From Magallana gigas (Eukaryota): DNA of 64,000 bases. A program made the position numbers and the translations under genes. The notes below the pieces were generated by a model, which saw nothing but the letters and a program-made list of their open reading frames with translations, did no database searches and was not told the origin of the DNA. Where the stretch lies: contig NC_088858.1 of the NCBI RefSeq assembly GCF_963853765.1, positions 15,500,001 to 15,564,000 on the forward strand, read 5' to 3'. Shown here piece after piece: positions 1,537-42,154 of the stretch; within the stretch, counting starts at the first letter, position 1, and the number at the start of each line of letters is the position of its first letter.

Positions 1537-2400
1537 ATGTTTCGCGCAACTGTTCTCCTCTGCATTCTGGCCTATGCCTTCTGTGACTACGACAAAAAAC
1601 TTCCATACAGTGCAAACTATTACAGTCCAGGGAGTCTTTTCTCTAGGGGAGGATTTGGTGGAGGAAACATAGGATTCGGCAATTTAAGGGGAGGTAATCT
1701 CGGATTTGGCAATGTTGGTGGACTCAGAATAGGAGCACCTTCTTTTGGTGGAGTCAACTTTGGTGGATTTGGAGGTCAAAGTTTCAGATCCTTCTTTTCT
1801 AGTCCCGGAGGTGCTGCTGCATCAAGTGCTGCTGCTTCTGATGGCCCGTTTGGTGGATCTGCAGCATCTTCATCCGCAGCATCTGGTGGATTGAGAGGTC
1901 CGCAATTCTTTGGTGGTAACGTTGGCAATACTGGATTTCAAAGCTTCAGGTTCTTTGGTCCCGGTGGTAGCGTAGCTACTGGTAGTGCTGCCGCCAGTGA
2001 CGATGGCTCGGCTGCTGCTTCGTCTGCTGCGGCGGGTAATGGAGCTGCCGCGGCCTCAGCAGCTGCAGCATCTCCATCACTTGGATTTCCTGGCCTAACG
2101 TCATTCCCAGGCAATGTCTACCCCTATCCTGGAAGTTTCCCTACCTATCCCGGAAGTTTCTCTTCCTATCCAGGAAGTCTCTACTCATATCCTGGAAACG
2201 CGTACTCCTTTCCAGGTCAATCCTTTTATCCTGGAAGTTTAAACACCTTTCCTGGTAGTGTGTTACCCGGGTCCATTAATCGTCCTTTACACAGATCAAA
2301 GGTAAGAAACAAATCAAACCAAACTTTGATGAGTTGAATTTGCAAGAAAATGCAAATTGACTTTTTATCACATATGCAACACTTTTTACAGGTTTATTGA
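1537..2400 (+). CDS. Secreted Gly/Ala/Ser-rich silk-like structural protein, cluster gene 1 (257 aa; coding exons 1537-2301 and 2392-2400)
   Basis: ATG at 1537 follows an acceptor. Signal peptide MFRATVLLCILAYAFC then DYDKK. GGF/GGNxG repeats, AAASSAAAS blocks and 7-aa PGSxxxY repeats. Donor AAG|GTAAGA at 2302 and acceptor TTTTTACAG at 2391 give GTT TAT TGA, so the C-terminus is RSKVY*. Confidence 0.9.
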
Positions 2401-2484
2401 AAATGATTCGTTTGAAATTGCCCGACTCCTGGCTGCCCGAAAGACAAGGATCCTGTTCATGTTGTGTTATTATTGAATTTGTTG

Positions 2485-2490
2485 AATAAA
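2485..2490 (+). terminator. Polyadenylation signal of gene 1
   Basis: AATAAA 85 nt after the stop, preceded by a TG-rich stretch. Equivalent signals lie at 18003, 34051, 35482 and 42249 in the paralogs. Confidence 0.6.
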
Positions 2491-2870
2491 TGTTAAGCAT
2501 CCACGAAAAAGCAGATTTGAGTTTTTGTTTTAAGGTGTTAATGGAACATACGACATACATTTTCACTATTAACACTCTAAACCATTCCTCTACGCTGTTG
2601 GGTAAAAATATTGGGAAAGAAAATTATATATAATCAAATTGTTCTGAACATTGTTAACAATTGAAGCAATCCTTGAATTCGCAAAAATTGTACATCATGT
2701 AAATAATTGCTCAATTCTATATCAGGATCAATATAAAAAAAAATGTTGTATATTTGCACATATTAGTGCTTCCATTATACACATGTCTAAAAAGTTGCCA
2801 ATTTTTGTCCTATTTTTTGTAATCGCAAAATGCATTTCAAACATTTAAGGCCAATAACAATCAATTTATC

Positions 2871-3270
2871 TATGCTGTCTCAGTCCCAGACTGGTGTTGC
2901 AGCCAGTAACAAATAACCTCGAAACCATTGTAGTTCATCATAAACTTTTAATAGTAATGGCTTCACAAAAGGTAAATAACTGAAAAATGAATAAACAAAC
3001 AATAAGTTCCCACTTAACCCGAATTTTCTCTGATAATTTACGATACCCGGCAAACAACACACATTTAAAGCAAATCTAAATATTTCATTGCATAACAATA
3101 GAGTTAAACAAACACTTACATCGCTGTGGCACCTCACTGGTGTTCAAAACAAACAAAAACACAGCCCTCACTCGCACATGCCATGGCCATGCTGAGTTGC
3201 AGAGTCCCTGACGTAATAAACAAAACCGTCCAGGTTGGAATACGGATTTCCGAAAAAGCGTGACAGCACA
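2871..3270 (-). repeat. 3' LTR of the BEL/Pao element (400 bp)
   Basis: Direct repeat of 10046-10446, with one substitution and one A-run indel seen by eye. Adjacent to the PPT. Confidence 0.93.
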
Positions 3271-3280
3271 CTCCCCGCCT
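3271..3280 (-). other. Polypurine tract
   Basis: AGGCGGGGAG on the minus strand immediately before the TG start of the 3' LTR. Confidence 0.85.
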
Positions 3281-3287
3281 GACTAAA

Positions 3288-4268
3288 TTAGTCACTATCC
3301 AATTTCGGTGAGTAAAGGACGACCACCTCAGCCACTGGTCTTAAATATTCAACTTGGCGTCCTCGTCGGATGACCTTTACTCTTATTTTCCGAACCTTTG
3401 CATCTTCACTTAAGATTGCCTCTTCTACTAAACCAGTTGGCCAATCGGATCTCTTCATATCTTTTTCTTTTACCAGTACAACATCACCTTTATGAAGATT
3501 CTCTTTCTGTGTCTTCCACTTCCTTCTGGCTTGAAGACTCTGTAAAAACTCATCTTTCCATCTCTTCCAAAACCTTTCTGCCAACACTTGCACATGCTTC
3601 CAGCCCGCCCTGAACATGTCCCGAATGTCTAGGTTTTGAAGAGGTGGTATATCATCTCCTTCTTTCTGTGTTAATAATAAATTCGGAGAAAGAATAGTTG
3701 GATTTTCTGGGTCGGAGGATACCGGAACTATTGGGCGAGAGTTGATAATCATGCAAACTTCTGCCATAAAGGTTGTCAATACTTCATGCGTCAACTCCTT
3801 TCCAGAATTTTCAAGTAGCAGAGCGTCAATGATCTTTCTAGCCACACCTATCATGCGCTCCCAGACGCCTCCAAAATGCGATGAATGAGGTGGATTAAAA
3901 ATCCATGTACTACCTTCGCTCAGAAGGAACTTCTGAATAGTGGGATCTTCTACATTCACAGCATCTGTCTTTGTATCTGTTGATCCAACAAAATTGATTC
4001 CCCTGTCAGATCTATACTCCAGTACTTTTCCTCGAATGGAAACGAATCTACGCACGGCGTTTATGAAAGAGGAAGTTGACATCTGTTCCACCACTTCGAT
4101 ATGTACTGCACGGACTGTGAGGCATGTGAACAGGATAGCCCACCTTTTACTGTTCGCATGTCCACCGCGTGTTCTTCTACTGACAACATTCCAATGGCCA
4201 AATGTATCGACTCCTACATAGGTAAAAGGTGGCACCGGCTTTAGGCGACAAGCAGGAAGATCAGCCAT
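3288..4268 (-). pseudogene. Integrase core segment of pol
   Basis: MADLP..PFTYVGVDTFG..VHIEVV..SDRG.NFVG..PPHSSHFGGVWERMIG. In frame with the upstream segment but separated by a TAG at 4278-4280. Confidence 0.9.
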
Positions 4269-4277
4269 GATTTGTGT

Positions 4278-6556
4278 CTACAGCTTTCCTCTAAGTTTTG
4301 CACAAGTGACACAGTGATGTAAAATAGAGGATACCAATCTTTTGGCACCTATTATCCAGTACCCGGCATTGCGCAATGCTCCTGCAGTAATGTGTCGACC
4401 TTGATGATGTACCTTTTCGTGGTGATGTCTAACCAGCAAGACTGCAATGTGTGAACTCTTAGGAACAATGATTGGATTTTGCACGTTTCTTTCAAACTTT
4501 GCTCTCTTCAGCCTTCCTCCTACTCTAAGTACTCCTTCTTCATCAATGTAAGGATTAAGTGATGACAACGTACTGTCTTTGGGTATTGCGTTGCCACTTG
4601 TCAAACTTCTGATCTCTTTCTCAAAGAAACTCTTTTGGGCTATCTTTAGAATTAGCTGCTCCGTAGCTCTGAATTCCTTCACAGTTGTAGGACTAATATG
4701 AGATGTCTTCTTCACTGCCGCTTCTCTAAGCCGAGTCACACCATACACAAGCCTTTCCCAAGATGAAAACTTGGAGAACCTTTTCTCCCAGGTTGAAAAG
4801 CTAGGGAAGGAACCAGCTGTTTCTATTATTTTCCTCGTCGTAATCATAGGTCTGACTTCCGCGTCTTCATCTGGATTTACCATTTGATAGCTTTCATTTA
4901 TATCATGATCTGGAGAAGAAGCATGAAAGGAAGGTTTCCACCATTTACTATCTGCTAGATTCTTTGCTTGCACTCCTCTTGTTCCCACATCTGCTGGATT
5001 TTGCTCCGAGGGAATGTAGTTCCATTGAGCTGGCTGTGAAACACGCAATATCCTTTCTACCCTGTTACTTACATACGTGTAAAACCTTCTTGTCCTGTTG
5101 CTTAAATATCCTAAGACAACCTTGCTATCAGAGTAGAAGTATGTAGCGTCAACTGGACTGTCTAACTGCCTTGTTACAGCGGTAGCAATTTCAGATGCTA
5201 AAACAGCGGAACAAAGTTCTAATCTAGGTACGGTATGCCCATGTCTGGGTGAGAGTTTGGATTTACCAAATACAAAACCAAACTCATATTCGTCATCTGT
5301 CCTGAAAACCTTCAGATATGCCACTGCTGCCACGGCTTGCTCTGACGCATCTGAGTATACATGGAGCTCTGTCCTAATGGCCTCATTGAACGGAATAGAA
5401 GTGAACATCCTTGGAATCTTGAGTAAGGATAGATCACTTGCACTATTCTTCCATTCTGTCCATCGTCTCTCAATTTCTACAGGTAAGGGTTCATCCCAGT
5501 CACAAGACAATTCCATCAGCTCTCTAAAAATCATGCGACCCAGGAGAATAAATGGAGCAACAAACCCAAAAGGGTCAAAAATGCTGTGGAGAGTAGACAA
5601 GACACCTCTTTTAGTAAATGGCTTCTCTTCAAACTTCACTTGAAATGCAAATGAATCCGTTTGCAAGCTCCATTGTAGTCCTAAACTTCTTGAAAGTGGA
5701 ACATCATCCATGACACTTAAGTCCATATTTTCCAGATCTGATGCTCTCTCCTCTGGTGGGAATGCATTGACAACATCCTTGTTGTTGGAAACGACCTTAT
5801 GAAGGCGCAAATTTCCACCAGTCAATAGAGCAGCTTTTGTCTTTTTCATTATTTCAACAGCTTTCTCGGGTGATGTTGTCGAAAGCAGACCATCGTCCAC
5901 ATAAAAGTTCTTGTTAACGAAGTTTACTACCTCTTCACTTGTTGTAGGATTTACACTAACTGCCTTTCTCAGACCATATGTGGCAATTGCTGGAGATGGT
6001 GAATTTCCAAAACATGTTCACACATTCTGTATTCGACAAGTTCTTTGTCTGGGTCATTATCACGATGCCATAAAAACCTCAAGTAATTCCTATCCTCTTC
6101 TGCCACAATAAATCCAAAAAACATCTGCTCAATGTCTGCAACTACACCAATCACATCTTTCCGGAAACGAAGTAGCACTCCTACAAGGCTATTCGTTAAG
6201 TCAGGTCCACAAAGCAAGACATCATTCAATGAGGTATTCTCAAACTTTGCTGATGAATCAAAGACAACCCTCAACTTTGACGGTTTCTTTGGGTGATACA
6301 CCCCGAATATTGGCAAATACCAGCATTCCTCATTGGGCTGCAAGGGTGGCGCCAATTCTGCATGCTTCTCTAATATTCCTTGCATGTAGATATGAAAGTG
6401 CTCTTGTTTGCAAGGATTCTTTGCCAGAGTTTTGTTCAAAATCCTAGCTCGTTTCAATGCCATTACTCTGTTATCTGGTAACCTATCTCTTGGCGTTCTA
6501 AATGGCAGTGGAGAAACCCAGCTTCCTTCCTCATTCCGTTTACAGTGTATTTCCAT
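4278..6556 (-). pseudogene. RT / RNase H / integrase zinc-finger segment of pol
   Basis: WYLPIFGVYHPKKPSKLRVVFDSSA, DIEQMF, then a one-base deletion near 6010 (HVF-GNSPSP restored by adding one T). Followed by FYVDD, DASEQA, PRLELC and HH..HHQG..C..C. Confidence 0.9.
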
Positions 6557-6694
6557 AATCTTTAAGAACTCTCTATCCTCTATTGATAAACCCGGTTTAT
6601 CATCATCAGCTGTGCGTTCGAACAGTAAGGTACCAAAATCATTTGGTTTGCTGTAGCCCAGTCCGTAACCTTCACTGTATGTAAAACTGCTTGG

Positions 6695-9339
6695 TCAAGG
6701 AGGCATAATAGAGGTTCTTCCCGCCTTAACCATGTGTGTCTTCTTAACACAAATATCATCTGGAACATGAACTTTATCTAAACAAGCATCTCCAATCAGG
6801 GCCCAGCCTAACGGAAGCTTCTGAGCATAGGGTGAGCTCTTTCCAACTCTTTGATCTATGACATGATGTGCTTCCACCAGATCACGTCCCAGCAGTAGTA
6901 ATATAGGTGCATCATTCAAAGGCGGAATCTCGGACGCAATATCTGCTAGGTGAGGGTAGTGAAGCGCAATTTCTGGGGTTCCTATTTCATCTCGATTACA
7001 AGGTATGCTGTCGCATTCAGTGACAACAGGTAAGTTCAGTGTTTGTGTTGAATCCCATGATTCAATGACTAGTCCATGAGCCTGTCTACCGCATGTTGGT
7101 ACAGTGCCGGAACATGAAGAAATTGTGTAACATTTTGGTTCAGAGTAAATTCTCAACATGTCAAAGAACTCACTGCGAGCAAGGGACCTGTTACTCTGAT
7201 CGTCAACAAGTGCATAAATCAAAATGGCATTCTCCTTTTCTCCTTGTCTGTACACTCGTACAAGCAACATTTTGGCACATGATTTACCAACAAATTGTTT
7301 CCCGCAAATTTGTAAACAACAGGCTGAAACTGATGAAACACTATTTGTTGTTATACTGTCTATGACACGTTGCTCCCCGCCATGCTCTTTGTATGGGTGA
7401 TCAGATTTGACATCAGTGGGGTGAAGTGCACTACAGTGTTCAGTATTATCACAAATGTCACATCTTAAATTCACTTTACAGTCCCTAGCCATGTGTTTTG
7501 AATTACAGCACCGAAAACAAATTCCTTCTTCCTTTAACAATCGTTTACGGTCTGCTAGCTTCTTGGATCTAAACACACGGCAATCCTGTAGTGAATGAGG
7601 TGTCTTACTGTTCAAGTGAATCAAACAAACCTGAGAGAGTTCCTTGCCCTGCTTTGACACAAATTCAGTCTTGTTTGTTCTCACTGACACACGCTCTCTG
7701 TTTCTGCTACCACTAAAGGGAATAGAAGTCACATGTTCTTTACTCTTTGGCTTGGACTGGACATCATACTGGAATCCTGGGTCATTGCGTATACGACTCA
7801 TTTCTTGGAGAAACTGAACTAAGAAAGTAAAGGGAGGATATGACACATTGTTTTTCTTTTTATAGTTTGAAGCTTGAGTTGTCCATTTGTCCTGCAAGTT
7901 GTAAGGAAGTTTGTTAATTATAGGTATGATTCCTGATGAAGAGTCAAAGTAGGAGAGAAGAGTTGAATATTTTGGGTTCTCTTTGGCTGCCTCAATCTCA
8001 GCTAGTATGTCTGCTAATTCATACATTCGTTTGTTTTCCTTTATTGTTAGTCGAGGAAATTGTTCCAGTTTGGTTTTCAAGGCTAATTCCACAAGCTCGG
8101 GTGAACCATATCGTTCTTCTAATCTCTCCCATATACGTTTCAAGGCTCTATCTGGGTATGCAGCATTTGCGGCTCTTATACTTAAAGCAAACTTAGTAGA
8201 TTCCGGTCCAAGGTACTTTGCTAGTAAATCGACTTCTTCAAATGGCGTTACTCCAAGTTCTTCTGCAATACTTTTGAAACTTGTTTTCCATGTAACAAAA
8301 ACTTCAGGCCGATCAGTAAATTTAGTGAACCTGGAAAATAGTAATTCCTTCTTCAATAGGAATTTGGTGAGGTCCCTAACAACATTGTCACCACCAGTCT
8401 GTTTCACTTCAAAGGGAGCTGCATTTGGGTTCAATGAGCTTTTATGTGTATCTTGGTATACTGGAAGTGGTCGAATGTCTCTTATTTCTGGTCTTTTGAC
8501 ACTGGTTTCCTCATCTTCAGGACAGCTTTCATATACATACTTTGCCGTCAGTTGACTCCTGTCGACTGGTTCCTGCAGCAGTGATGGCTCTGGGGAGACA
8601 TGCCTACTTCCCATTTCTGTTTCCTCAAGTGCTCTTACTTCTGCTGCGGCAATTGCAAACTTTCGCTCTTGTTCTAGCAGTAGCATTTCAGCATCTAGCT
8701 CTTCTTTCTGTCGAGTCTGTTCTGCCTTATGCTTTGCTTCCTTTTCCTCCAAGGATGCCTTCTGTTTTCTCAACATCAGCTCTCTTGCTTCGTATTGTAG
8801 ACGGGCTCGTTGCGCTTCAACTTCCATCTTCTTTTTCGCTAGGAAACTCCCATTTGTAGAAGGCTCTCCAACCTCTGATCTAGTGAGTAGACCTGAACGA
8901 CTTGAACCTCTCTGTGATAGTCGTTCAGTTGCTTCAATTCTTGCCTCTCTGATACTTCTGCTTAACTCCTTCATAATGTCTCTACATTTGATTTGTAGAA
9001 CTTCTTGTACTCTTAATTCTGAAATACTGTCCTCTGTGTTTGTCCTATCAAGGAAAGCTAAGAAGTCCTCAGATTCATGTGCATGTTTGTTTTCAATTCT
9101 TGAAGCTCTTTATCCAATGTTCTCAGAGATTTAAAATCTAATTGTGTTTTATATTCATCAAGTTTCACAGCCATATCTTCAATATCAGACCAAATTGTAT
9201 CACATTTATAGAAATATTTCTTAACGGTTTCTTCATATAACACTTGACCCTTTTCTGTCTTTCTCTTTACTCTACCCCTACTTTCAAGTTCATCATGTTC
9301 ATCATGTTCAACACTGACTTCTTTTTCTGCATCAGCCAT
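6695..9339 (-). pseudogene. Gag-protease segment
   Basis: Probable start MADAEKE..RKTEKG..Y at 9339 with at least two frameshifts around 9090-8990. The ORF 8974-6695 has CCHC-type knuckles (CFRCCNSKHMARDC) and the protease motif ALVDDQSNRS. An in-frame TGA at 6695-6697 interrupts the frame that continues into RT. Confidence 0.88.
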
Positions 9340-14627: not shown

Positions 14628-14657
14628 GAATTATTTGTTTATATATATATAAAACGA

Positions 14658-16781: not shown

Positions 16782-16996
16782 GGAGGAACTTCCAGTCCAC
16801 TAGTCAGGACATCATTCAGGGCCTCAGGGATTCAAGATACAGGTAAGATATAAACAACCATTGCAGCGCAATGTTCCTTATTGAAAAGATACGCTATTTC
16901 TATACATAGCTCTAAATCCATTAATGACTGCTCTTATCAAATATATGACGATATATGATGATGAAGTTATATTTCCTAAGTATTTGTATTGCAGTC

Positions 16997-17916
16997 ATGA
17001 TCCGCGCATGTGTTTTCCTTAGCATTTTGGCATTTGCCGTATCTGATTACGATAAGAAATACCATTATGGCACCAACATCTACCGTCCAGGAGGGTTTGG
17101 TAGAGGAAATCTTGGATTAAGTGGTCTTGGCGGGGGAAATCTTGGATTAAGTGGTCTTGGCGGAGGAAATCTTGGATTTAATGGTATTGGCGGAGGAAAT
17201 CTTGGATTTAATGGTATTGGCGGAGGACAATTTGGCTTAAGTGGTCTTGGCGGAGGAAATCTTGGATTAGGTAGTCTTGGCGGAGGAAATCTTGGATTAG
17301 GTAGTCTTGGCGGAGGAAATCTTGGATTAGGTAGTCTTGGCGGAGGAAATCTTGGATTAAGTGGTCTTGGCGGAGGGAATCTTGGCTTAAGTGGTCTTGG
17401 CGGAGGAAATCTTGGATTAAGTGGTCTTGGCGGAGGAAACCTTGGGTTTAGTGGTAACTTTGGTGGACTCCAAGTGGCAAGACGTTCATCTTTTGGGCCA
17501 GGAAGTGCAGCCTCGGCAAGTGCTGCTTCTTCTGGTGGATCTGCTGCTGCTTCAGCTGCTGCATCATCTTCATCCTTAGGTGGCTCAATATTCCCAGGAA
17601 GGGTTAACTCTTTTCCCCAACCGTACAGATTCCCTCAACAATATGGCTTTCCTGGCGGACAATATTACTTTCCTGGCGTACAATATGGATTAACCGGACA
17701 AGATGGCTTTTCTGGACAATATGGCTTCCCCGGACAAATCGGCTTTCCTGGACCGTTCAACTTTCCTGGTCAACAATCCCAGTACGGGATCAGTCCTCTC
17801 CCAAAGAGAAAGGTAAGAACAATGAAATCAATTTTTATTAAAACCTTTGTGTAAAAATTCGGACACATCAACATTTATTTGATATATATTTCATTCTTTT
17901 ATTACAGGTTTACTAA
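16997..17916 (+). CDS. Secreted Gly-rich silk-like protein, cluster gene 2 (274 aa; coding exons 16997-17812 and 17908-17916)
   Basis: Acceptor TTGCAG at 16994 and ATG at 16997. Signal peptide [16 protein letters not shown] then DYDKK. Twelve 10-aa [10 protein letters not shown]-type repeats, one Ala/Ser module and FPGQYG repeats. Donor at 17813 and acceptor at 17907 give GTT TAC TAA, so the C-terminus is KRKVY*. Confidence 0.9.
17099..17458 (+). repeat. 30-bp coding minisatellite, 12 units
   Basis: Consensus GGCGGAGGAAATCTTGGATTAAGTGGTCTT encoding [10 protein letters not shown] and variants. Confidence 0.9.
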
Positions 17917-18333
17917 AGAATATTCGGACAAGCACCCACTAGAAAATGGATCACTGGATACACAATGTTATTGTTGATTTCGGTTACTTGTTGGGGTTTT
18001 TCAATAAATATTATATGAGCATTCTTCATGGTCGATCTCGTGTTTTGATTTTACCTCATTTGTGTAAATTCCTTTTCTGCTTTTAAGCAAGCACTTTTAA
18101 ATGGTCTCGACTACACAGACATTTCTCTCTACTCTTTTTTGTATTGATGTTCAATAGGATTTTTATAACATGCGCGACTTTAAAACCAGTATTGGTGAAC
18201 ATTAAGCGTGGCCAGTAAAACATTTACTTAAACCGACGTGACTAAAAAATAAAAACTTACGTGAATAAAGCGAAAAATGCAAGATTAAGACAAAAGCGAA
18301 CATTTATTGTTGTAAGCATATAAATATAGAGGT

Positions 18334-19517: not shown

Positions 19518-19554
19518 TTATTATATATATATTTATTAAAATTATAAAGTTCTT

Positions 19555-23570: not shown

Positions 23571-23573
<3 letters not shown>

Positions 23574-23589
23574 GTTCCAGTAAATGTTT

Positions 23590-31987: not shown

Positions 31988-32015
31988 TGACGTATGTTTT
32001 TGAAAATATATAAAA
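31988..32015 (+). promoter_or_regulatory. Promoter of cluster gene 3: TGACGT plus TATA box
   Basis: TGACGTAT at 31988-31995, TATAAAA at 32009-32015, AGGAC at 32039. Exon 1 donor CAG|GTAAGA at 32078. Confidence 0.72.
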
Positions 32016-32788
32016 GGGATACGGTTAAACAAAACAGTAGGACTTTTAGTTTAAGAGCCTCCAGATCCACACAGCAGGTAAGAAAGAAATACACCTCTCG
32101 TTTACATTTCGCAGCTTCTAAATCGGATTTTTTTTAAACTGTATTAGTCTCCCTAAGAAGAAAAGTTCTGTGCTTATGCTTTCTTTATTTTCTATACTTA
32201 ATAATAGTTTAAAGCTTAACAAATAATATCGAACAATATAGAGAAGATCTGATGGTTATATTAAATTGTTGACCACCCAGCTACCATAAACGGGGCTAAG
32301 TAAATTAAGAAACGCCAAAACTTCAAATTCAATAGTCGATTGCTCATATTCCTATTTTTTCTGTCGAACAATAGTTCAAATGAAGCCATTCGTTTAATTA
32401 CATTATAAGTATATTTAAACTACTTTTCAATAAAAAAAATCAATAATAATAGACTCATATATATCTGATAAATCATTGTAGATGATTAAATGTAAGTTCA
32501 GATATTATTTATTGTCAACGATTTTTTTTATAAACCCAAGTAGTAAGGAAAATAGCGGCTTTTTAGTACTTAGTAGAATGAATTTAACGGTATCTATGTT
32601 AAATACTTTTATCTCATGAAATGTGCACCTAAATACGGTTCCAACAATATGCTTTAAGAATAGTTGAATGATGTATTACCGAGAAAGCACTATCACAAGC
32701 CCTATCCTAAATTACAACATTGAATAAAAATTGGCAAAATATACACATCTTTTTTTTAGACCCAACTATTTGTCTTCCATTTGTAGTC

Positions 32789-33956
32789 ATGATCAAGCAA
32801 ATCTTCCTCCTCTGCTCCTTGGCCAGTGTTTTTGCCGATTCTGAAAAATACGGTGGTTGCAATGGCTACGGATGTGCCGTTGGTGTAAACCAGTACGGCC
32901 CAGGGGGTGCATCCAGTACCTTCTTTTCCTCTGGAGGAATTGGCGGACAGCAAGTATTGGGTGGACTTGAACATCAATTGCTCGGTGGATCTTTAGGAGG
33001 TCTAGGACCCATTGCTGCCGGTCCAGGTGGCGCTGCTGCTTCAAGTGCCGCTGCTTCCAGTGGGCGCTTTGGAGGCTCTGCTGCATCATCAGCAGCAGCT
33101 AGTGGAGCACCAGGTTTAAACTTTGCAGGACCCGTTGGTTTTGGAAACAATGGTTTCAATGGTTTCAATAGCTTTGACGATGGCAACTTTGGCTTGAATA
33201 ATTTTGGATTGAATTCCGCCGGGCCCGGGGCTGCTGCCTCATCAAGTGCCGCTGCTGCCGGTGGACCTTTTGGTGGAGCTGCTTCCTCCTCAGCCGCTGC
33301 ATCAGGTGCTCCTGGTTTCGGTAACAACGTCGGTTTCCCAGGTCTTCAAGGATTCCAAGGTGGTTTCCAAGGATTCCAAGGTGGCCTTCAAGGATTTCAA
33401 GGTGGTCTCCAAGGATTCCAAGGTGGTCTTCAAGGATTCCAAGGTGGCCTTCAAGGATTTCAAGGCGGTCTCCAAGGATTCCAAGGTGGTTTCCAGGGAG
33501 TACAAGGGTTCCAGGGATTCCCAGGCGTCCCATCCTTTGGATTTCCAGGGAGTGCTGCAGCCGGAGCCGCGGCTTCTAGTGACGACGGATCAGCCTCCGC
33601 ATCCTCTGCTGCCTCTACTGGTGCCCAAGCCTCCGTTTCTGGTTCAAATTTCCCAGGTATTGGACGACCTTATCCATTCCCCGGAAGTGTACTTCCTACC
33701 TATCCCGTTGTACCGCAAGTTTACCCAGGAGTCCCCACTTACCCACTTCCAGGCGTATCCACTTACCCAGTCCCAGGGGCGCCCGTAACATCTTATCCAT
33801 TTCCCTCGCGTAGACCATTCAGACCGATTGGAAGGGTATGTATCTTATTTATACGGCATCTTCATGTCTTACTCTAAGCAGAATCTTTATTTTTCAATTC
33901 TATTAAGCATTCAAATGTAAACAAACTTTTTTTTTCTATTTCAGAAGGTATATTGA
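32789..33956 (+). CDS. Secreted Gly/Ala/Gln-rich silk-like protein, cluster gene 3 (352 aa; coding exons 32789-33835 and 33945-33956)
   Basis: Acceptor TTGTAG at 32786. Signal peptide MIKQIFLLCSLASVFA then DSEKYGGCNGYGC. Three Ala/Ser modules, GGLQGFQ heptads and a PGVPTYP region. Donor at 33836 and acceptor at 33944 give AAG GTA TAT TGA (RKVY*). Confidence 0.9.
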
Positions 33957-34593
33957 GAAAATTTGTCCAGAAATACTCAATCCAGGAATACTTTGATACC
34001 ATCTCATATTGTTGTTGTTGTGTATCTGTTTTAAAGCAATCAAATTATTAAATAAATAATACTTGAATTGTTGTGCTTTGTATCATCACCATTTAATGCT
34101 AAACAAAAGGTTTATTGTGGTTTAAACGTTTTTCGTTTAGCATCAATTCCTTATTAATCCAGTTAACGCGAAATCTTATGTTCAAAGATGTAACAATTTT
34201 TATGAATAGGACCATTGTCCTCGAACATTCATATCATCTAAATTGTGCAATTACCTATTTTCTGAAATATTGATTCCTCACAGTGTATGAAAAGGGTTTG
34301 GTTGTTGGAACGCAGTAAACGTTGGATATAAAATGCGCATTTGCCAGTCATGAAACAAGGGGTACTAATCTAAATTATTGTGAAGGTAGACGCCTGAATG
34401 AAAACTAATTTTGATGGGACCTTTACTATTTCCAGCCATTCACAGTCAGTTTTGTGAATTTCACGTATTTTTCAAAGTAATTTCATTCAAATAATTGACA
34501 ATTCTCATATGGCTCGTCGTAGTGACACCAGAAAATCTATTCAAGCAAAACGAGATTACGCTTTTTTTAAAACCAAAACCTTAAGACAGCATG

Positions 34594-35405
34594 AGGACCC
34601 GTTGGTTTTGGAAACAATGGTTTCAATAGCTTTGACGATGGCAGCTTTGGCTTGAATAATTTTGGATTCAATTCCGGTGGAGCTGCTTCTGCAGCCTCTA
34701 GCGCTGCCGCCGCCGGTGGACCTTTTGGTGGAGCTGCTTCCTCCTCAGCCGCTGCATCAGGTGCTCCTGGTTTTGGTTTGAATGTTGGTTTCCCAGGTCT
34801 CCTAGGATTCCAAGGTGGTCTCCAAGGATTCCAAGGTGGTCTCCAAGGATTCCAAGGTGGTCTCCAAGGATTCCAAAGTGGTCTCCAAGGATTCCTAGGT
34901 GGTTTCCAAGGAGTACAAGGTGGTTTCCAAGGAGTACAAGGGTTCCAGGGATTCCCAGGCGTCCCATCCTTTGGATTTCCTGGAGGTGCTGCAGCCGGAG
35001 CCGCGGCTTCTAGTGACGACGGATCAGCCTCCGCCTCCTCTGCTGCTTCTACTGGCGCCCAAGCCTCCGTTTCAAGTTCAAAATTTCCAGGAGTCCCCAC
35101 TTACCCAATTCCAGGCGTGCCCACTTATCCACTTCCAGGCGTACCCACCTACCCAGTTCCAGGCGTACCCACTTACCCAGTTCCAGGCGTGCCCACTTAC
35201 CCACGTCGTGGCGTACCTAGTTACCCACTTCCAGGCGTACCTTTACCCCCTTTTTCAGGTCAACCACGTAGACCATTTGGAAAGGTATGTATCACTCAAT
35301 TTTCGAACAACAATTGCAAATGTAACTCTTAGCTACATCTTTATTTTGCAGCCATGCAATTAAAGGTTTAACATTTTCCTTTTTCTCTTTCAGAGGGTAT
35401 ATTGA
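34594..35405 (+). pseudogene. 5'-truncated paralog (cluster gene 4): 3' two-thirds of exon 2, intron, last exon and polyA signal
   Basis: Starts abruptly at AGGACCCGTTGG, mid exon 2, with an in-frame TGA at the junction and no promoter, exon 1 or signal peptide. Open for 230 codons to a donor at 35285. Acceptor at 35393 gives AGG GTA TAT TGA (KRVY*). AATAAA at 35482. Confidence 0.85.
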
Positions 35406-36375
35406 GAAGTTGAGAATAAACCAATCCAGAAATACACTGATCACCATTTGCAATATTGTTGTTGTGTGTCTGTTATTAAGCAATAAAAAAAAATAACAAT
35501 TTCTACTAGACTTTTTGTTGCTTGTTGATACATTGTTTAAATGCTTTTAATTTACTGACAATACGGCTTACTGTGGTTTTATCAGTTTTTTTCTGTTTTG
35601 CGGTAAAGTGTGATGATTTTATTTGTTCAGCCGTAGTTGAGGCGATCAACGAAATTAAATTTTCAGTAATAAATCGAATTCACATCAATTTTAATGAATT
35701 TTGTAAGACAATTTTAAACAAAGCTTCGTATAATTAAAACTGAGCATTGTACATTATACAAGACGATTAAATGCTTATGGTGTATGAAAAGGAATTTATT
35801 ACTGGAAAACAGCGAATTTTACAATGTATATTAAATGTGTACTGTGGCATGGAGCGCAAATACTCTTTACTGTAAAAGAGGACGCTCGTTTAATACGGCA
35901 AGTTTATAATCCTTTGCATTTTCGGTCAACTATAGGCCGATCAATTTGGAGTATTTTTGTAGAAGTTTCTTCACACTTCTAGCATGTTAAAATAATCTCA
36001 CTCTATAACAGAGATACACTAAATCTGAAGACATCAAATATAAAACTTAATAATTTTTGTTTTTACTTTGCACGCAATGAATTATTTGGTGAAAATAACC
36101 AATGGAAGCAAACTGAAAAAATTAAAAACATAAATCTTCATTAAACACACAGAATGCTTGACTGGCATTTTGGAATGACCTTTGAATTAAAATTAAATCG
36201 ACAGTTTCTATTTAATTAGGTTGGCTCACTACAGTACACCTCTTTGAAATAGTTTCTCACAGAAATTTACATGATTCTGATGGAAATGGTTTATAAAAGT
36301 ATAGAAATCGATGGAAATTTTGGATTAAAAAATAATTTTTTCAAGCATTTAGTTCAGTCAATGTGAACAAAATCC

Positions 36376-36430
36376 CAAGGCGGGTTGAAACTCATGACCT
36401 GCGGTTTACAAGCCCGATACTTTAACCACT
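36376..36430 (-). mobile_element. tRNA-derived SINE head fragment
   Basis: Minus strand AGTGGTTAAAGTATCGGGCTTGTAAACCGCAGGTCATGAGTTTCAACCCGCC has degenerate A-box and B-box-like segments but no complete cloverleaf. Confidence 0.45.
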
Positions 36431-36870: not shown

Positions 36871-37240
36871 TTATTATACTTTCATGTTAAATACTGAAAT
36901 CTGATTGTTGTAGACGCAGTTGGTAATCCGTTCTATTACCCTTAGCGTTAGCAACACACTTGACAACGGGTAACACAACCCAAATTGTTACATGCGCGTA
37001 AATTATGCGCGTACGGTTAACAGTAGAATTCACTTCATTTCTATATAAAAACAGTAAAATTTTCTTTAAAATTAAGACATTCAGTATAATAAAATGAATA
37101 GTGCCTGTTTGGGAGGGTAACTGTTGAAATTGACACCCCTCGAAAACCACTGTCAACCTCAGCATCGCGTCGGTTGATAATGGTTGTCTTGGGGTGTCAA
37201 TTTCAACAGTTACCCTCCCAAACAGGCACTATTTATATAA
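36871..37240 (+). mobile_element. Non-autonomous interspersed repeat with a ~80-bp subterminal hairpin; family unassigned
   Basis: A second, truncated copy lies at 59565-59857 with long near-identity (AAATACTGAAATCTGATT..AGACGCAGTTGGTAATCCGTTCTATTACCC). An inverted copy of the hairpin lies at 36720-36800. Confidence 0.7.
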
Positions 37241-38769
37241 TGGTACCCGTTGCCAAGTATGTTGCAAAGGCTGAGGGTGACAGAACAGATTATTAACGAG
37301 ACTGGGGGTGGCTGCCATTTTAAAGTGCTTTTATCTGTATACAAAAAAGATTTTAACTTCAATGTTCTATAACTCTTACATCGTACTGAAAATTTCTTTT
37401 GAAAGAAATGGATATGATGGTATTAAAGCATTATTTAAAGAGTCAATTGATGGTAAACAAAGGGTTATAAAATGCAAAAAATAATTTCAGCTGTTTTTCA
37501 GCATTTTCTAACCTTTTAAAGGGAGGTAACTTTTAAAACTCTATATATTTTGTAATATTTTCCTTTTATTTCTTTTTTTTTTTTTATTTCACTATCGATT
37601 TTTTTAAATGCTCAATCTTTATTGCACATGCATTGATTATTATTATGTTAAAATTTGGAAATAATCTTGTGGCTACTTTTTATTGTTTTACATATTTGGA
37701 TTTGTATGACATATATATTTTTGGTAAAATTGTGATATTTTTCTTTTTAACAAATAATGGTTAGTTTTTCTGTGTTAATTTTTTGTGATGTTATTGCTAT
37801 GTTTTTTGCCTTTATTTATATTTCTTATATTTTTCATAATTTTTTTTTACATAATGTGCAGTTTTTCTTCAGTTGCAATAAATGATAAAATAACGATGAT
37901 TGTGATGTGGTCTTTTATATTAAAATGTAAACTAAGATTATATGAAACATGTTTGCACATTTGGTGAATCTTGGAGACATTTTTGGACCCCCAGCCTCCT
38001 TAACTGCGTTCAGATTTCAGCTTTCAACATGAAAGAATAATAATAACCAATGTTTAGTAAAGAAAAAAATCTATATACATGTATTTTACATTTCAAATTT
38101 TAGTATCTGCCTATAAATTTATATACATCTCTTCTTTAAAAGGAGATCAATCCAGTTTAATAAAGGACACGGTCATGGTTTTAATCAGATACGACGTACA
38201 TGACATGACAAAGGCATTACAGCTTGCACTAACGAATAAATAAGTAGAAAAATAAAATTAATACACGGGTTGATGTAATAAAAAAGAAGTAATGTTCTTA
38301 ATGAGAACAATTACTTTATCCTAGCTTTTTTCAATGAAAACAGTTTCGAAACAGACGTAGGCTCTCTTTCAAATTAATCTTTAAGAAAATTTCATAAATC
38401 ATCCATGAGTAAAAGAATACATGAATTTATCAAAATCTGATTGAAAAGAACCATGGGGTAGAGTATATACGAGGAATGTTCCAAAAGTAATAACACGTAG
38501 CTGTTTTCACCCACATTTATTAATGGAATTTATCTCTAAGGATAAATTCATTGATACAAGGAACAGCAACCTTATCTTAAGTCGTGATCCTAATAAGGAT
38601 CAAGTTAGTGTTAGCTTAACCATCGGGTTTGGTGTTTACAATTAATATCGGGTTCGTGCTCAAAGCTTGGAAATATGTGGTCAACCAACTGCTTCAAGGG
38701 TCTACCTAACTTAGCCATTAACCCGCTTTGAGCAAAGCGCTATTTATCTACTATTTGGTCCATCGATTA

Positions 38770-39281
38770 TTTATTTACTCAATCCATCGATTGTCAATTA
38801 TGATTGATAGATTGATTGATTATGAATTGTTTGATTCAATAATTATATTGCTAATGTCATTGATTTATATTGATTGTCTAAACAGTTTGATTGATTGATT
38901 ATTTATAAATTGATTGATTGAACAATTATATTGTCAATGTGATGATTCATAATCATTGATTGAACAATTGATTGTTGATGTGATGATTGATTGATTGATT
39001 AATTGTAAAGCCATATACCTGCTCACCAATTTGGTGGCAGGTCGGTTGAATGGCATGTCAAACGTTGAATTATTCGATCGTTTCCATTTGCATTGTATAA
39101 ATATCTATCTGTATTGTATAAATTTCTATCTGTATTCTATAATTTTCCATTTGTATTGTATAAATATTCAGTTCAATTGTATGATTTTTCTATTTGTATT
39201 CTATAATATACCATTTGTATTCTATAATTTTCCATTTGTATTCTTTAATTTTACATTTGTATTCTACAATTTTACATTTGT
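38770..39281. repeat. Degenerate (GATT)-rich tract followed by a ~21-bp minisatellite
   Basis: TTGA/GATT repeats at about 38770-39000. About ten TTTCCATTTGTATTCTATAAT-like units at about 39080-39281. Confidence 0.7.
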
Positions 39282-40418
39282 TTAAATATATAGACTTGCT
39301 ACTGACCAGGAACATTTGTTATAAATGATGAAGTGTCATTGTATAAAAAAATTCTTGGAACTTCCCTTGTGTATCGATTTCAATTATATCTTTTTGACAG
39401 GTATGTGTATTCCATTTTTCAAAACTAACGGAAACAATAACCTGGTACAGACTTTGGCTGCTGGTCATTATTGCTGTACGAAAAAAATGGTCTAACAGGC
39501 CGTAAGGCTACATTTCGTCATATACACAAGAAACTCTACAAATTACAGCGTTATATTTTGTTAAATTTTGGACTGTATAGCGGAATTTCTAAACACATTC
39601 TATGAAAAAAGTCAGAACAAAAGAATCAAAGGACATTTATCAACAAATATCCTTACTTTGCATACCTCTAAAATGTTTTGAAACACCCGTATAAAACTGT
39701 ATGGTTTATTTTACCTTTATAAATTGGGAATCTCTATTTGTATGTGATTTAAATATTTTTTATATTCCGAGGACGGTTAACATGCTTAAAAAACTCTCTG
39801 AGGCAAGCAAAGTGTCAACATCAGAACTGTAACTCCCAGACTTGTCAACCCGAATTTTTTCGAGGAGCTTCCGCCCTGCACTTAATATTTGTTTTATTCA
39901 AATAAACAATAAAAACATGTTAAAGACAATCAGTCTACTGTATTCTTATTTTATTTTTAGAAAAAATGTCAGTAATTTCTAGACCTGATTCAGCCGAAAA
40001 TACAATGTGCGTCGACAGTTTTCTGTTAGGACATTCCGGTTAAAGGTGACTATAAAACATTCTGTAAGCCGAAAATCCACCGTTTCTTCCTATAGAACTA
40101 AAAATATACTCTTCACAACCAATAAATATCAACTCACTTATAAAATTACCAAGAATATTCGGTCTGTATATGATTAGTAGAAGGAAGTGTAATTATAATT
40201 ATGTGGTTGAGGAGGAACAGAGTCCATTAAGACTTGAATTTCACATAAATAACCATATTAAAAATAGATTATACGCGATTAAAACAGAAACGTAATCACT
40301 TTTATTTGTAAAATGATCATGATTAAAAAATGCATGACCAGTTTGTCTTTAATTTGTATGCAATCACATACCTCTGTTTTAATGATAAAGATAAGTTTAT
40401 TTTTATGCTAGATAATGA

Positions 40419-40445
40419 TGACGTTGTTTTTGAAAATATATAAAA
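40419..40445 (+). promoter_or_regulatory. Promoter of cluster gene 5: TGACGT plus TATA box
   Basis: TGACGT at 40419-40424, TATAAAA at 40439-40445, AGGAC at 40469. Exon 1 donor CAG|GTAAGA at 40510. Homology to the gene 3 promoter extends about 400 bp upstream. Confidence 0.72.
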
Positions 40446-41028
40446 GGGAAAAGGTGAAACAAAATAGTAGGACTTGTAGTTTAAGCGCCTCCAGATCCAC
40501 ACACAACAGGTAAGAAAGATCTACATCTAATCGTTTGTACATTGATGAAGCCGACCACCGAGCAATTATACTTTTCTCCGTAAATAAAAACCAACTTGCC
40601 CCTCTCCTTTTTAAAAAAATAATTGAGTTTGTTTACCTATACAAAATGTTTCTACTTCAGATATTTGCATGAATATATACCTTTTTAAATTAAAACCATT
40701 TCAAATCATTTGAAATGAATACAGGTACTTTCGATTGTACATAAGGGATCATCTGATTTTGTCACTAGGTTTATCCTACAACACTGGCTAATTTTATGTT
40801 AAAAAGTATGATAAAAAATACCTCTGTTTTAAACAACCCTCTCCTTTGAATGTATCGCTAAAACAGTGTCCTAATTATGCTTTAAAAGAATTGTTAGCAT
40901 TTTCAAAAAATCTAACCTGGGAAATATAATCACAAAAATTTTTTTTAATATCGTCTAAACAAGAAAATAATAATGCAACATTAGACAAACATGTTTAAAA
41001 AACCCATCTTTTTTCTCTACTTGTAGTC

Positions 41029-42154
41029 ATGATCAAACAAATCATCCTTCTGTGTTCCGTGGCCAGTGTATTTGCCGATACTGAAAAATATGGTGGCTGC
41101 AATGGCTATGGATGTGCCGTTGGTGTAAACCAGTACGGCCCAGGGGGTGCATCCAGTACCTTCTTTTCCTCTGGAGGAATTGGCGGACAGCAAGTATTGG
41201 GTGGACTTGAACATCAATTGCTCGGTGGATCTTTAGGAGGTCTAGGACCCATTGCTGCCGGTCCAGGTGGCGCTGCTGCTTCAAGTGCCGCTGCTTCCAG
41301 TGGGCGCTTTGGAGGCTCTGCTGCATCATCAGCAGCAGCTAGTGGAGCACCAGGTTTAAACTTTGCAGGACCCGTTGGTTTTGGAAACAATGGTTTCAAT
41401 GGTTTCAATAGCTTTGACGATGGCAACTTTGGCTTGAATAATTTTGGATTGAATTCCGCCGGGCCCGGGGCTGCTGCCTCATCAAGTGCCGCTGCTGCCG
41501 GTGGACCTTTTGGTGGAGCTGCTTCCTCCTCAGCCGCTGCATCAGGTGCTCCTGGTTTCGGTAACAACGTCGGTTTCCCAGGTCTCCAAGGATTCCAAGG
41601 TGGTTTCCAAGGATTCCAAGGTGGTCTCCAAGGATTCCAAGGTGGCCTTCAAGGATTTCAAGGCGGTCTCCAAGGATTCCAAGGTGGTTTCCAGGGAGTA
41701 CAAGGGTTCCAGGGATTCCCAGGCGTCCCATCCTTTGGATTTCCAGGGAGTGCTGCAGCCGGAGCCGCGGCTTCTAGTGACGACGGATCAGCCTCCGCAT
41801 CCTCTGCTGCCTCTACTGGTGCCCAAGCCTCCGTTTCTGGTTCAAATTTCCCAGGTATTGGACGACCTTATCCATTCCCCGGAAGTGTACTTCCTACCTA
41901 TCCCGTTGTACCGCAAATTTATCCAGGAGTCCCCACTTACCCACTTCCAGGCGTATCCACTTACCCAGTCCCAGGGGCGCCCGTAACATCTTATCCATTT
42001 CCCTCGCATAGACCATTCAGACCGATTGGAAGGGTATGTATCTTATTTATACAGCATCTGCATGTCTTACTCTAAGCAGAATCTTTATTTATCAATTCTA
42101 TTAAGCATTCAAATGTCAACGAAATTTTTTTTTCTATTTCAGAAGGTATATTGA
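41029..42154 (+). CDS. Secreted Gly/Ala/Gln-rich silk-like protein, cluster gene 5 (338 aa; coding exons 41029-42033 and 42143-42154)
   Basis: Signal peptide MIKQIILLCSVASVFA. The body is nearly identical to gene 3 but has two fewer heptads. Donor at 42034 and acceptor at 42142 give AAG GTA TAT TGA (RKVY*). AATAAA at 42249. Confidence 0.9.

What the first reader, a model, noticed from the sequence alone, without database searches (positions are those of the whole stretch)
2292..42154. A hidden micro-exon gives every paralog the same basic C-terminal (K/R)VY-stop tag
In all five copies a phase-0 intron sits 2-3 codons before the stop. The spliced ends are RSK|VY*, KRK|VY*, GR|KVY*, GK|RVY* and GR|KVY* (last-exon coding bits 2392-2400, 17908-17916, 33945-33956, 35394-35405, 42143-42154). 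The rest of the proteins diverge strongly, yet this motif is retained, which implies selection. The ORF track reads through the intron and misses it. Established knowledge: shematrins end in RKKKY/RRKKY/RRRKY. Inference: a basic-plus-terminal-Tyr tag used for sorting, matrix anchoring or DOPA/quinone cross-linking, which may link otherwise unrelated shell protein families.
Basis: partly seen in the sequence, partly recalled or inferred. Interest (0 to 1): 0.75.

Follow-up and report, generated by a model that had tools for sequence, protein, structure and literature searches.

The report
Oyster silk-like proteins share a spliced VY tail
A family of at least 20 oyster genes for secreted, silk-like shell-type proteins all end in the same tiny tail (basic residues, then Val-Tyr, then stop), encoded on its own spliced mini-exon and kept by selection, probably as an end-handle for anchoring or cross-linking the proteins.

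Summary
All five window genes have a canonical GT-AG, phase-0 intron of 90-109 nt, 2-3 codons before the stop, giving (K/R)VY-stop.

RNA reads show the predicted junctions for copy 3 (its near-twin copy 5 cannot be told apart) and copy 4, with almost no intron retention. Copies 1 and 2 were not tested with reads.

The feature is much wider than reported:
- A sixth copy lies just upstream of the window.
- A second cluster 37 Mb away holds 14 examined poly-alanine silk-like genes. Thirteen end in basic|VY and one in TY. These splices are inferred from sequence.
- Two Saccostrea orthologues end in KKK|VPVY and KKK|VNIY, with the intron in the same place.

Codon use shows selection on the protein. 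All four Val codons, both Tyr codons and all three stops occur, while the introns and 3'UTRs are scrambled.

Lysine occurs only at the two protein ends: 2 of 67 lie in the 4,476 middle residues. I read the tail as an end-specific anchoring or Lys/Tyr cross-linking handle. This is inference, about 40%.

The link to shematrins is only a resemblance and could not be tested. The gene family is already annotated (spidroin-like). I found no description of the tag in four open-access text searches.

The parts
721..788 (+). c1 TATA box (721-727) and non-coding exon 1, ending at 788
   Evidence: Sequence and motif scan. The layout matches that of c3, whose exon 1-exon 2 splice is seen in RNA.
1535..2301 (+). 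c1 main exon (CDS from ATG 1537). Signal peptide, Gly-rich and Ala/Ser-rich low-complexity body, YPGS repeats. Ends ..HRSK.
   Evidence: No Pfam domain.
2302..2391 (+). c1 terminal intron, 90 nt, phase 0, GTAAGA..TTACAG
   Evidence: Not tested with reads.
2392..2400 (+). c1 coding part of the last exon: GTT TAT TGA = V Y stop. AATAAA at 2485-2490.
16995..17812 (+). c2 main exon (CDS from 16997). GGGNLGL repeats. Ends ..PKRK.
17813..17907 (+). c2 terminal intron, 95 nt, phase 0
   Evidence: Not tested with reads. The one database ORF that reads through it (P0029) comes from a genomic DNA contig.
17908..17916 (+). c2 coding part of the last exon: GTT TAC TAA = V Y stop. AATAAA at 18003-18008.
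32009..32077 (+). c3 TATA box and non-coding exon 1 (ends at 32077)
   Evidence: Junction 32077/32787 has 7 reads. A further 38 reads have loose ends matching the end of exon 1.
32787..33835 (+). c3 main exon (CDS from 32789). Ends ..RPIGR.
   Evidence: Read depth 70-220 in X21.
33836..33944 (+). c3 terminal intron, 109 nt, phase 0, GTATGT..TTTCAG
   Evidence: Spliced out in 55 raw reads (19 starts) and in contigs of X1, X2 and X3. Intron depth is about 0.
33945..33956 (+). c3 coding part of the last exon: AAG GTA TAT TGA = K V Y stop
   Evidence: A variant with 13 nt missing just after the stop (9 reads) still encodes KVY-stop.
34593..35284 (+). c4, a 5'-truncated copy in this assembly (open frame from 34595). 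Ends ..RRPFGK.
   Evidence: Homology to the c3 unit stops exactly at 34593. It is transcribed. The reads carry a non-reference upstream continuation that matches protein P0052.
35285..35393 (+). c4 terminal intron, 109 nt, phase 0
   Evidence: Junction 35284/35394 has 13 reads from 10 starts.
35394..35405 (+). c4 coding part of the last exon: AGG GTA TAT TGA = R V Y stop
41027..42033 (+). c5 main exon (CDS from 41029). Recent duplicate of c3.
42034..42142 (+). c5 terminal intron, 109 nt, phase 0
   Evidence: Reads cannot be told from those of c3.
42143..42154 (+). c5 coding part of the last exon: AAG GTA TAT TGA = K V Y stop

Best explanation
The five genes belong to an oyster-specific family of secreted, intrinsically low-complexity silk-like proteins. 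NCBI names the Saccostrea orthologues 'spidroin-2-like'. The poly-Ala members are of the Shelk2 / spidroin-1-like type.

The family has a fixed three-exon plan:
1. a short non-coding exon;
2. one large exon holding the signal peptide and the whole repetitive body, ending in a basic cluster whose last codon is AAG or AGG;
3. a phase-0 intron, then a last exon whose coding part is only Val-Tyr-stop. In c3-c5 one more basic codon comes first. In Saccostrea it is V-x-x-Y.

Shown:
- the intron is spliced, for c3 (or c5) and c4 only; all other junctions are inferred from sequence;
- the tail is kept by purifying selection on the protein across at least nine diverged lineages and two genera;
- the stop always follows the Tyr directly.

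Inferred mechanism (my commitment, about 40%): the tail, together with a short Lys/Tyr-bearing N-terminal stretch, acts like a collagen telopeptide.
- The repetitive middle is free of lysine.
- All reactive lysines, plus a terminal tyrosine, sit at the two ends.
- The basic patch docks the chain end to acidic matrix or mineral.
- The terminal Tyr, after oxidation by mantle tyrosinase or peroxidase, and the neighbouring Lys amines form end-to-end covalent links that make the secreted silk-like gel insoluble.

The intron itself is most simply an inherited feature of the family, not a functional device.
For: Structure and splicing:
- Searches give the exact coordinates and 55 + 13 junction reads with no retention.

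Breadth:
- A sixth copy upstream ends KSK|VY-TAG.
- Saccostrea echinata has KKK|VPVY and S. cucullata KKK|VNIY, with the intron in the same position and phase.
- Fourteen genes at G000:C6:52.49-52.65 Mb carry basic|VY (one TY).

Selection:
- Val codons: GTT 10, GTA 5, GTC 3, GTG 1.
- Tyr codons: TAT 11, TAC 9.
- Stops: TAA 10, TGA 6, TAG 4.
- Column information is 1.7-2.0 bits at codon positions 1-2, 0.34 bits at Val position 3, and about 0.1-0.3 bits in the 3'UTR.
- Exon ends, introns and UTRs are only about 50% identical between lineages.
- Proteins are 25-55% identical between nine groups.

End-specific chemistry:
- 31 Lys lie in the first 35 mature residues, 34 in the last 8, and 2 in the 4,476 middle residues.
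- Arg is tolerated in the middle (62 residues).
- The last residue of the main exon is K in 17 genes and R in 3, although both AAG and AGG fit the splice consensus.

Context from papers:
- Tyrosinase and peroxidase families are expanded, and partly mantle- or shell-associated, in C. gigas (PMC5379566).
- Quinone tanning and lysine cross-links have been proposed for KRMP and shematrin-type proteins (PMC4498902).
Against: - There is no direct evidence of any modification, cross-link or binding.
- The tissue of the RNA runs is unknown to me, and presence of these proteins in shell was not shown here.
- The proteins contain many other tyrosines (6% of the middle), so a terminal Tyr is not needed for general tanning.
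- The strict conservation of Val, and of the stop right after Tyr, suggests that something reads the free C-terminus specifically. Tyrosinase chemistry alone does not explain that.
- One family member has TY (L067).
- One database homologue (P0002, contig not retrievable) reads VY followed by Trp instead of a stop.
- Splicing in c1, c2 and the second cluster is inferred, not seen.
Confidence: 0.4

Rival explanations
1. The tail is a recognition motif for a protein that reads free C-termini. Candidates are a cargo or sorting receptor in the secretory pathway, a tail-specific protease or carboxypeptidase, or a PDZ-type domain in the matrix. On this view the tail's job is targeting or docking, not covalent chemistry.
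For: - The stop follows Tyr in all 22 genes examined, and Val is nearly invariant. That is typical of motifs read together with the terminal carboxylate.
- PDZ-domain proteins are reported from bivalve shell matrices, oyster included. A PDZ shell protein of Mytilus pulled down an 'alanine and glycine-rich protein' (PMC7573561).
Against: - K at position -2 does not fit the usual PDZ ligand classes (my knowledge).
- The shell PDZ proteins described are cytoskeletal-type proteins without clear secretion.
- Saccostrea inserts two residues between V and Y, which a tight pocket would not easily accept.
- No partner has been identified.
Confidence: 0.2
2. The basic cluster is a proteolytic processing site. 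A convertase-like cut would be followed by carboxypeptidase trimming, and in c3-c5 possibly by amidation at Gly. VY would then be a discarded or signalling dipeptide.
For: - Tails such as RRNK, RPRK, RSRK, KRK and GKR resemble R-x-K/R-K/R sites.
- c4 has the classical Gly-Lys-Arg, and c3/c5 have Gly-Arg-Lys.
Against: - The residue before Val is Lys in 17 of 20 genes, whereas furin-type enzymes prefer Arg (my knowledge).
- Most members lack the Gly needed for amidation.
- A discarded dipeptide would not be expected to stay V-Y across nine lineages.
Confidence: 0.15
3. The conservation is at RNA level only (acceptor context, stop-codon context, 3'-end formation). The two residues would have no role in the protein.
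For: - The junction always rebuilds AAG|GT.
- The last exon codon is always AAG or AGG, and the base after the stop is A in 16 of 19 genes. So some splice and termination constraints do act here.
Against: - Third codon positions vary freely while positions 1-2 of both codons are fixed. All synonymous codons are used.
- Acceptor consensus does not require T at +2 or TA at +4/+5.
- In c3-c5 the VY codons are not at the junction at all, yet they are kept.
Confidence: 0.05
4. KKxx-type di-lysine ER-retrieval signal.
For: Several members end in KKVY.
Against: - These are soluble secreted proteins with only an N-terminal signal peptide, so the tail is lumenal and cannot meet COPI (my knowledge).
- Position -3 is Arg in c4 and L072.
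- Position -4 is often S, N, G or R.
Confidence: 0.02

Closest known systems
Oyster silk-like shell/mantle proteins (Shelk2; 'spidroin-1-like' and 'spidroin-2-like' of Crassostrea and Saccostrea)
   Same: - Signal peptide, Gly-rich blocks, poly-Ala / Ala-Ser blocks and Tyr/Pro-rich repeats.
- Direct sequence homology to the Saccostrea spidroin-2-like proteins (E 1e-23 to 1e-25).
- Same three-exon gene plan.
   Different: Nothing essential: this is the family itself. What is added here is the family-wide basic-VY tail on its own micro-exon and the restriction of lysine to the ends. I did not find either described, but only four text searches bearing on it were run in an open-access library.
Shematrins and KRMPs of pearl oysters (Pinctada)
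   Same: - Secreted Gly(/Tyr)-rich low-complexity mantle proteins in tandem clusters.
- They end in a short basic run and a terminal Tyr: RKKKY, RRKKY, RRRKY, PRKKY; for KRMP RKYKY, RPKKY, RRKY (PMC3896809; clusters in PMC4759782).
- One family member here (L072) even has a GGY-rich stretch before KKRSR|VY.
   Different: - Their Tyr follows the basic run directly. Here a Val always intervenes (VxxY in Saccostrea).
- No sequence match to shematrins or KRMPs appeared in any search.
- Shematrin homologues are reported absent from C. gigas (PMC4759782).
- Whether their last residues sit on a separate exon could not be checked here.
Collagen telopeptides and mussel byssal preCol termini (end-specific cross-linking of a repetitive fibre protein)
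   Same: A long repetitive body without the reactive residue, with short non-repetitive ends that carry the cross-linking residues. This is an analogy of logic only, drawn from my own knowledge.
   Different: There is no homology and the chemistry differs (lysyl oxidase; His-metal/DOPA). No cross-link has been shown for the oyster proteins.
Spider spidroins
   Same: Poly-Ala and Gly-rich composition, which explains the automatic names.
   Different: No homology. Spidroins have folded N- and C-terminal domains of about 100 residues. Here the 'terminal domain' is a 4-6 residue tail, and no Pfam domain is detected.

Membership tests
Oyster silk-like 'spidroin-like'/Shelk2-type proteins | Significant sequence similarity to named members | tested here: met
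   c3 versus the Saccostrea spidroin-2-like proteins: E 4e-25 and 5e-23. c1 versus the same: 1e-12 to 1e-14. c2 versus a poly-Ala member (L051): E 1e-4, with full-length colinearity. No Shelk2 sequence itself was compared, so 'Shelk2-type' rests on composition.
Oyster silk-like 'spidroin-like'/Shelk2-type proteins | N-terminal signal peptide, Gly-rich and poly-Ala/Ala-Ser low-complexity body, no globular domain | tested here: met
   Translations. No Pfam hit. The signal peptide was judged by eye only.
Oyster silk-like 'spidroin-like'/Shelk2-type proteins | Expression in mantle and presence in shell | not testable with these tools
   The genes are transcribed at good depth in polyA RNA, but run and tissue names are coded.
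Shematrin / KRMP | C-terminal signature RnKmY (basic run directly followed by terminal Tyr) | tested here: inconclusive
   A basic run and a terminal Tyr are present in 22 of 22 genes, but always with Val (or VxxY, TY) between them. The signature is as quoted in PMC3896809.
Shematrin / KRMP | Sequence homology to Pinctada shematrins/KRMPs; GnY repeat body (shematrin) or Lys/Trp-rich lead domain (KRMP) | tested here: not met
   No shematrin or KRMP hit in three word-based searches and one exhaustive HMMER search. The bodies are Ala/Ser/Gly-rich and Lys-free. The literature states there are no shematrin homologues in C. gigas (PMC4759782).
Shematrin / KRMP | Same exon plan (terminal residues on a separate phase-0 micro-exon) | not testable with these tools
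   No Pinctada genomic sequence could be reached. The paper most likely to describe it (PMC3627088) is not held.
Di-lysine (KKxx) ER-retrieval proteins | Cytosol-facing C-terminus of a membrane protein with Lys at -3 and at -4 or -5 | tested here: not met
   No membrane segment beyond the signal peptide. Position -3 is Arg in c4 and L072, and -4/-5 are often not Lys.

The most novel reading that the evidence does not exclude
The basic-(Val)-Tyr-COOH tail on a phase-0 terminal micro-exon may be the last recognisable trace of common ancestry between the oyster silk-like family and the pearl-oyster shematrin/KRMP families, which are currently regarded as lineage-specific inventions. On this reading it marks a general 'end-linking' module by which pteriomorph bivalves polymerise Lys-free silk-like chains through Lys-Tyr (quinone) bonds at their ends. 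This would also explain why silk-like proteins escape trypsin-based shell proteomics.
Probability: 0.15. Interest if true: 0.7.

Novelty: new variant of a known kind. Interest (0 to 1): 0.5.

Why it matters
Whether oysters use silk-like proteins in shell building is disputed. The large C. gigas shell proteome was read as lacking them, which was taken as evidence against the 'chitin-silk gel' model (quoted in PMC5379566).

This work shows a family of at least 20 such genes, probably 27 or more, that are expressed and under selection. Their lysines sit only at the extreme ends, so trypsin would give huge uncleaved bodies and a useless VY dipeptide. The proteins could therefore be present in shell but invisible to standard proteomics.

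The invariant tail gives a concrete, cheap handle for experiments: antibodies or peptides against the tail, Y-to-F, V-to-A and K-to-R variants, and a search for Lys-Tyr cross-links.

The shared exon plan gives a way to test whether fast-evolving low-complexity shell proteins of different bivalves are related after all.

Tried and rejected
- **Homologue searches.** Only two Saccostrea proteins, a few fragments and many low-complexity false hits (fish 'proline-rich protein 7', collagen-like) came back. Proteins of the window's own genome and its nearest relatives seem not to be served.
- **P0029 as evidence of retention.** P0029 reads through the c2 intron and looked like intron retention. Its contig is colinear with the genome through the promoter and the 5'UTR intron, so it is genomic DNA. 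Rejected.
- **Genome-wide pattern for K|VY micro-exons.** It gave 19 hits against 21 for the reversed control. Only c0, c1 and c2 follow long ORFs. With this intron length and donor type the tag is therefore not used by other families. The pattern missed the second cluster, whose donors are weak or whose introns are longer. That cluster was found by protein search instead.
- **Intron origin by tandem duplication of an AAG|GTATAT segment.** In L063, L065, L076 and L069 the intron itself starts GTATAT or GTATAC (= Val-Tyr), so read-through would also give K-V-Y. Four of 20, one or two steps from the usual GTATGT, is not convincing. Kept only as a note.
- **KKxx ER retrieval and amidation.** Considered and rejected or down-weighted (see rivals).
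- **Papers.** McDougall et al. 2013 (PMC3627088) and the oyster genome paper could not be read.
- **P0002.** Its contig is not on record, so its 'VYW' reading could not be checked.

Full report
**What is in the window**

Five genes lie on the + strand, all with the same plan:
- a TATA box;
- a short non-coding exon;
- an intron;
- one large exon starting two bases before the ATG and carrying the whole body of the protein;
- a short phase-0 GT-AG intron (90, 95, 109, 109 and 109 nt);
- a last exon whose coding part is 2-3 codons plus the stop, followed 10-90 nt later by AATAAA or ATTAAA.

| Copy | Length | End |
|---|---|---|
| c1 | 257 aa | RSK\|VY |
| c2 | 274 aa | KRK\|VY |
| c3 | 352 aa | GR\|KVY |
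| c4 | truncated | GK\|RVY |
| c5 | 338 aa | GR\|KVY |

The proteins have a signal peptide and a short N-terminal stretch (DYDKK.. or D(S/T)EKYGGCNGYGC..). Then come Gly-rich repeats, Ala/Ser blocks, Tyr/Pro-rich repeats and a basic tail. No Pfam domain is found.

**Is the intron spliced?**

One call of read-laying was available, and I used it on 32000-35500, which covers c3 and c4. In stranded polyA raw reads (X21):
- junction 33835/33945 is seen in 55 reads from 19 start points;
- junction 35284/35394 is seen in 13 reads from 10 start points;
- the 5'UTR intron 32077/32787 is seen in 7 reads, and 38 more reads have loose ends matching exon 1.

Contigs of three further runs from other studies carry the 33835/33945 junction. 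Bin depths imply almost no reads inside the terminal intron. No alternative acceptor reached the listing threshold; in particular the AG three bases downstream is not used.

Nine reads show a variant that lacks 13 nt just after the stop. It still encodes KVY-stop.

Reads of c5 cannot be separated from those of c3. The c1 and c2 junctions remain untested. The only database ORF that reads through the c2 intron (P0029) comes from a contig colinear with genomic DNA including the promoter, so it says nothing about retention.

**How far the feature extends**

- A sixth copy lies 8 kb before the window (G000:C6, about 15,491,742-15,492,742). It is closest to c1 and ends KSK|VY with a TAG stop.
- The only named homologues, 'spidroin-2-like' of Saccostrea echinata and S. 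cucullata, have the intron at the same place and phase. They end KKK|VPVY and KKK|VNIY.
- Searching the genome with c2 found a distant relative 37 Mb away on the same chromosome. Searching with that relative found a second cluster.
- I examined 14 of its genes, all poly-Ala silk-like proteins of 232-360 aa. Each has a main exon ending in a basic cluster at a phase-0 GT. Between 87 and 444 nt downstream lies a pyrimidine-rich acceptor followed by Val-Tyr-stop. One gene, L067, has Thr-Tyr-stop.
- More members exist at C6:52.36-52.46 Mb and 52.55 Mb.
- Splicing in this second cluster is inferred from sequence only.

**Is it more than chance or recent duplication?**

c3 and c5 are 95% identical overall, and c0 and c1 are 70% identical. 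Even so, the 20 genes fall into nine groups that are only 25-55% identical to each other, despite shared low complexity. Between lineages, the last 60 nt of the main exon, the intron and the 3'UTR align at about 50%, which is background.

Anchored on the Val codon, the columns give:

| Position | Information or usage |
|---|---|
| Val positions 1-2 | 1.7 bits each |
| Val position 3 | 0.34 bits (T 10, A 5, C 3, G 1) |
| Tyr positions 1-2 | 2.0 bits each |
| Tyr position 3 | T 11, C 9 |
| Stop | TAA 10, TGA 6, TAG 4 |
| 3'UTR from two bases after the stop | 0.0-0.3 bits (occasional 0.5-0.8) |

This is the signature of purifying selection on the amino acids and on the position of the stop. It is not the signature of a nucleotide motif or of gene conversion. 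In c3-c5 the VY codons are not even adjacent to the splice site.

Some RNA-level constraint is also visible. The last codon of the main exon is always AAG or AGG, and the base after the stop is mostly A.

A genome-wide pattern for K|VY micro-exons with 75-105 nt introns occurs at chance frequency (19 hits against 21 for the control). Only the family members follow long ORFs.

**A further regularity**

Lysine is confined to the ends of the mature proteins. Of 67 lysines in 21 proteins, 31 lie in the first 35 residues, 34 in the last 8, and 2 in the 4,476 residues between. Both exceptions are Saccostrea lysines about 11 residues from the end. Arginine occurs 62 times in the middle. The N-terminal stretch is also Tyr-rich (16%).

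Lys and Arg are therefore not interchangeable in these proteins. That points to lysine's chemistry, not to charge alone.

**Mechanism**

What is shown is a spliced, selected, strictly terminal basic-Val-Tyr tail on a Lys-free repetitive body. What I infer is that the ends work like telopeptides.
- The basic patch docks to acidic matrix or mineral.
- Tyr, after oxidation, and the Lys amines form covalent end links.

Supporting context comes from papers. Tyrosinase and peroxidase families are expanded in C. gigas and partly mantle-specific or shell-associated (PMC5379566). Quinone tanning and lysine cross-links have been proposed for Gly/Tyr-rich and Lys-rich pearl-oyster matrix proteins (PMC4498902).

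Against this reading:
- There are many internal tyrosines.
- Nothing in tyrosinase chemistry explains the invariant Val or the need for a free carboxylate. Those features fit a specific reader of C-termini better: a sorting receptor, a processing enzyme or a PDZ-type domain.
- PDZ proteins have been reported from bivalve shells, and one pulled down an Ala/Gly-rich protein (PMC7573561).

My estimates are: cross-link or anchor handle 0.4; C-terminus recognition 0.2; proteolytic processing 0.15; RNA-only constraint 0.05; di-lysine retrieval 0.02.

**Comparison with what is known**

The genes are members of the oyster silk-like family that databases call spidroin-like. The poly-Ala members match descriptions of Shelk2 and spidroin-1-like (PMC6542584, PMC4944945 reference list). 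No Shelk2 sequence was compared directly.

The tail resembles the RnKmY signature of shematrins and KRMPs (PMC3896809) but differs by the constant Val. There is no detectable sequence homology, and shematrin homologues are reported absent from C. gigas (PMC4759782). I therefore do not file these genes as shematrins. Whether the two tails share an origin depends on the Pinctada gene structures, which I could not reach.

The micro-exon is already in the NCBI models of the Saccostrea orthologues, so it is hidden only from ORF lists. I found no description of the family-wide tail, its codon-level conservation or the lysine restriction. That rests on four text searches bearing on it in an open-access library, so it is not strong evidence of novelty.

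**Identity of the genome**

The window is G000:C6:15,500,001-15,564,000 of a 564-Mb assembly in 29 contigs. Earlier notes of this scan call the genome Pacific oyster (s1-375654, unchecked). Homology to Saccostrea is consistent with the family Ostreidae.

**Verdict**

- Observation confirmed and considerably extended.
- Selection claim supported.
- Function untested.
- Shematrin link unproven.

This is a solid, moderately interesting feature of a known gene family, with clear experiments attached.

Noticed in passing
window 3288-8974, minus strand: A BEL/Pao-type LTR retrotransposon lies between c1 and c2. It has ORFs for gag-like protein, Pao peptidase (PF05380, E 2e-43), integrase zinc-binding and core domains, and DUF5641. 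The ORFs are split into several frames. It accounts for the GC-rich stretch at 4-10 kb.
   Followed up: partly
window 32760-34593 versus 41002-42788; c4 at 34593-35405: The c3 unit is a 1.8-kb, 95%-identical copy of the c5 unit, running from the end of intron 1 to 640 bp past the stop. Its right edge coincides with the point where c4 loses its 5' half. RNA reads continue upstream of 34593 into a sequence absent from the assembly, encoding ..GAPGFSFGGPVG.. The Logan protein P0052 has the same sequence. An intact c4-like gene therefore exists in other individuals or haplotypes, which indicates copy-number or structural polymorphism in the cluster.
   Followed up: partly
G000:C6:52.36-52.65 Mb (loci L062-L076): A second, larger cluster of poly-Ala silk-like genes, with at least 14 examined and about 7 more places listed. 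Most are on the minus strand. Many have weak-looking donors (GTTTGG, GTTAAC, GTACAG, GTAATC). L068 has an (AT)n microsatellite inside the terminal intron.
   Followed up: partly
L063, L065, L076, L069 (second cluster): In these genes the terminal intron itself begins GTATAT or GTATAC, i.e. Val-Tyr codons. An unspliced message would also encode ..K-V-Y followed by 1-9 more residues (..SKVYL-stop in L069). This could be coincidence with the donor consensus, or a trace of intron origin by duplication of an AAG|GTATAT segment.
   Followed up: no
protein P0002 (ENA, contig not retrievable): This is a homologue of c3 from another source, called as one ORF through the intron. It reads ..RKSK, then the intron, then ..LQ-VY-W.. 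and runs on through the 3'UTR homologue. The codon after VY there is TGG, not a stop. It may be a real stop loss or a sequence error.
   Followed up: partly
window 43649-44315, minus strand: An ORF of Thr/Pro-rich mucin-like repeats (PTTTT units, 134 aa) overlaps ORFs in other frames. Whether it is a gene or just a repeat was not examined.
   Followed up: no
   Followed up: no
L067 versus L070 (G000:C6:52.524 and 52.530 Mb): These are a head-to-head pair of 79%-identical genes. L070 ends RPKK|VY. L067 ends RHKK|TY (ACC instead of GTC, two substitutions). L067 is the only exception to Val among the 20 genes.
   Followed up: no
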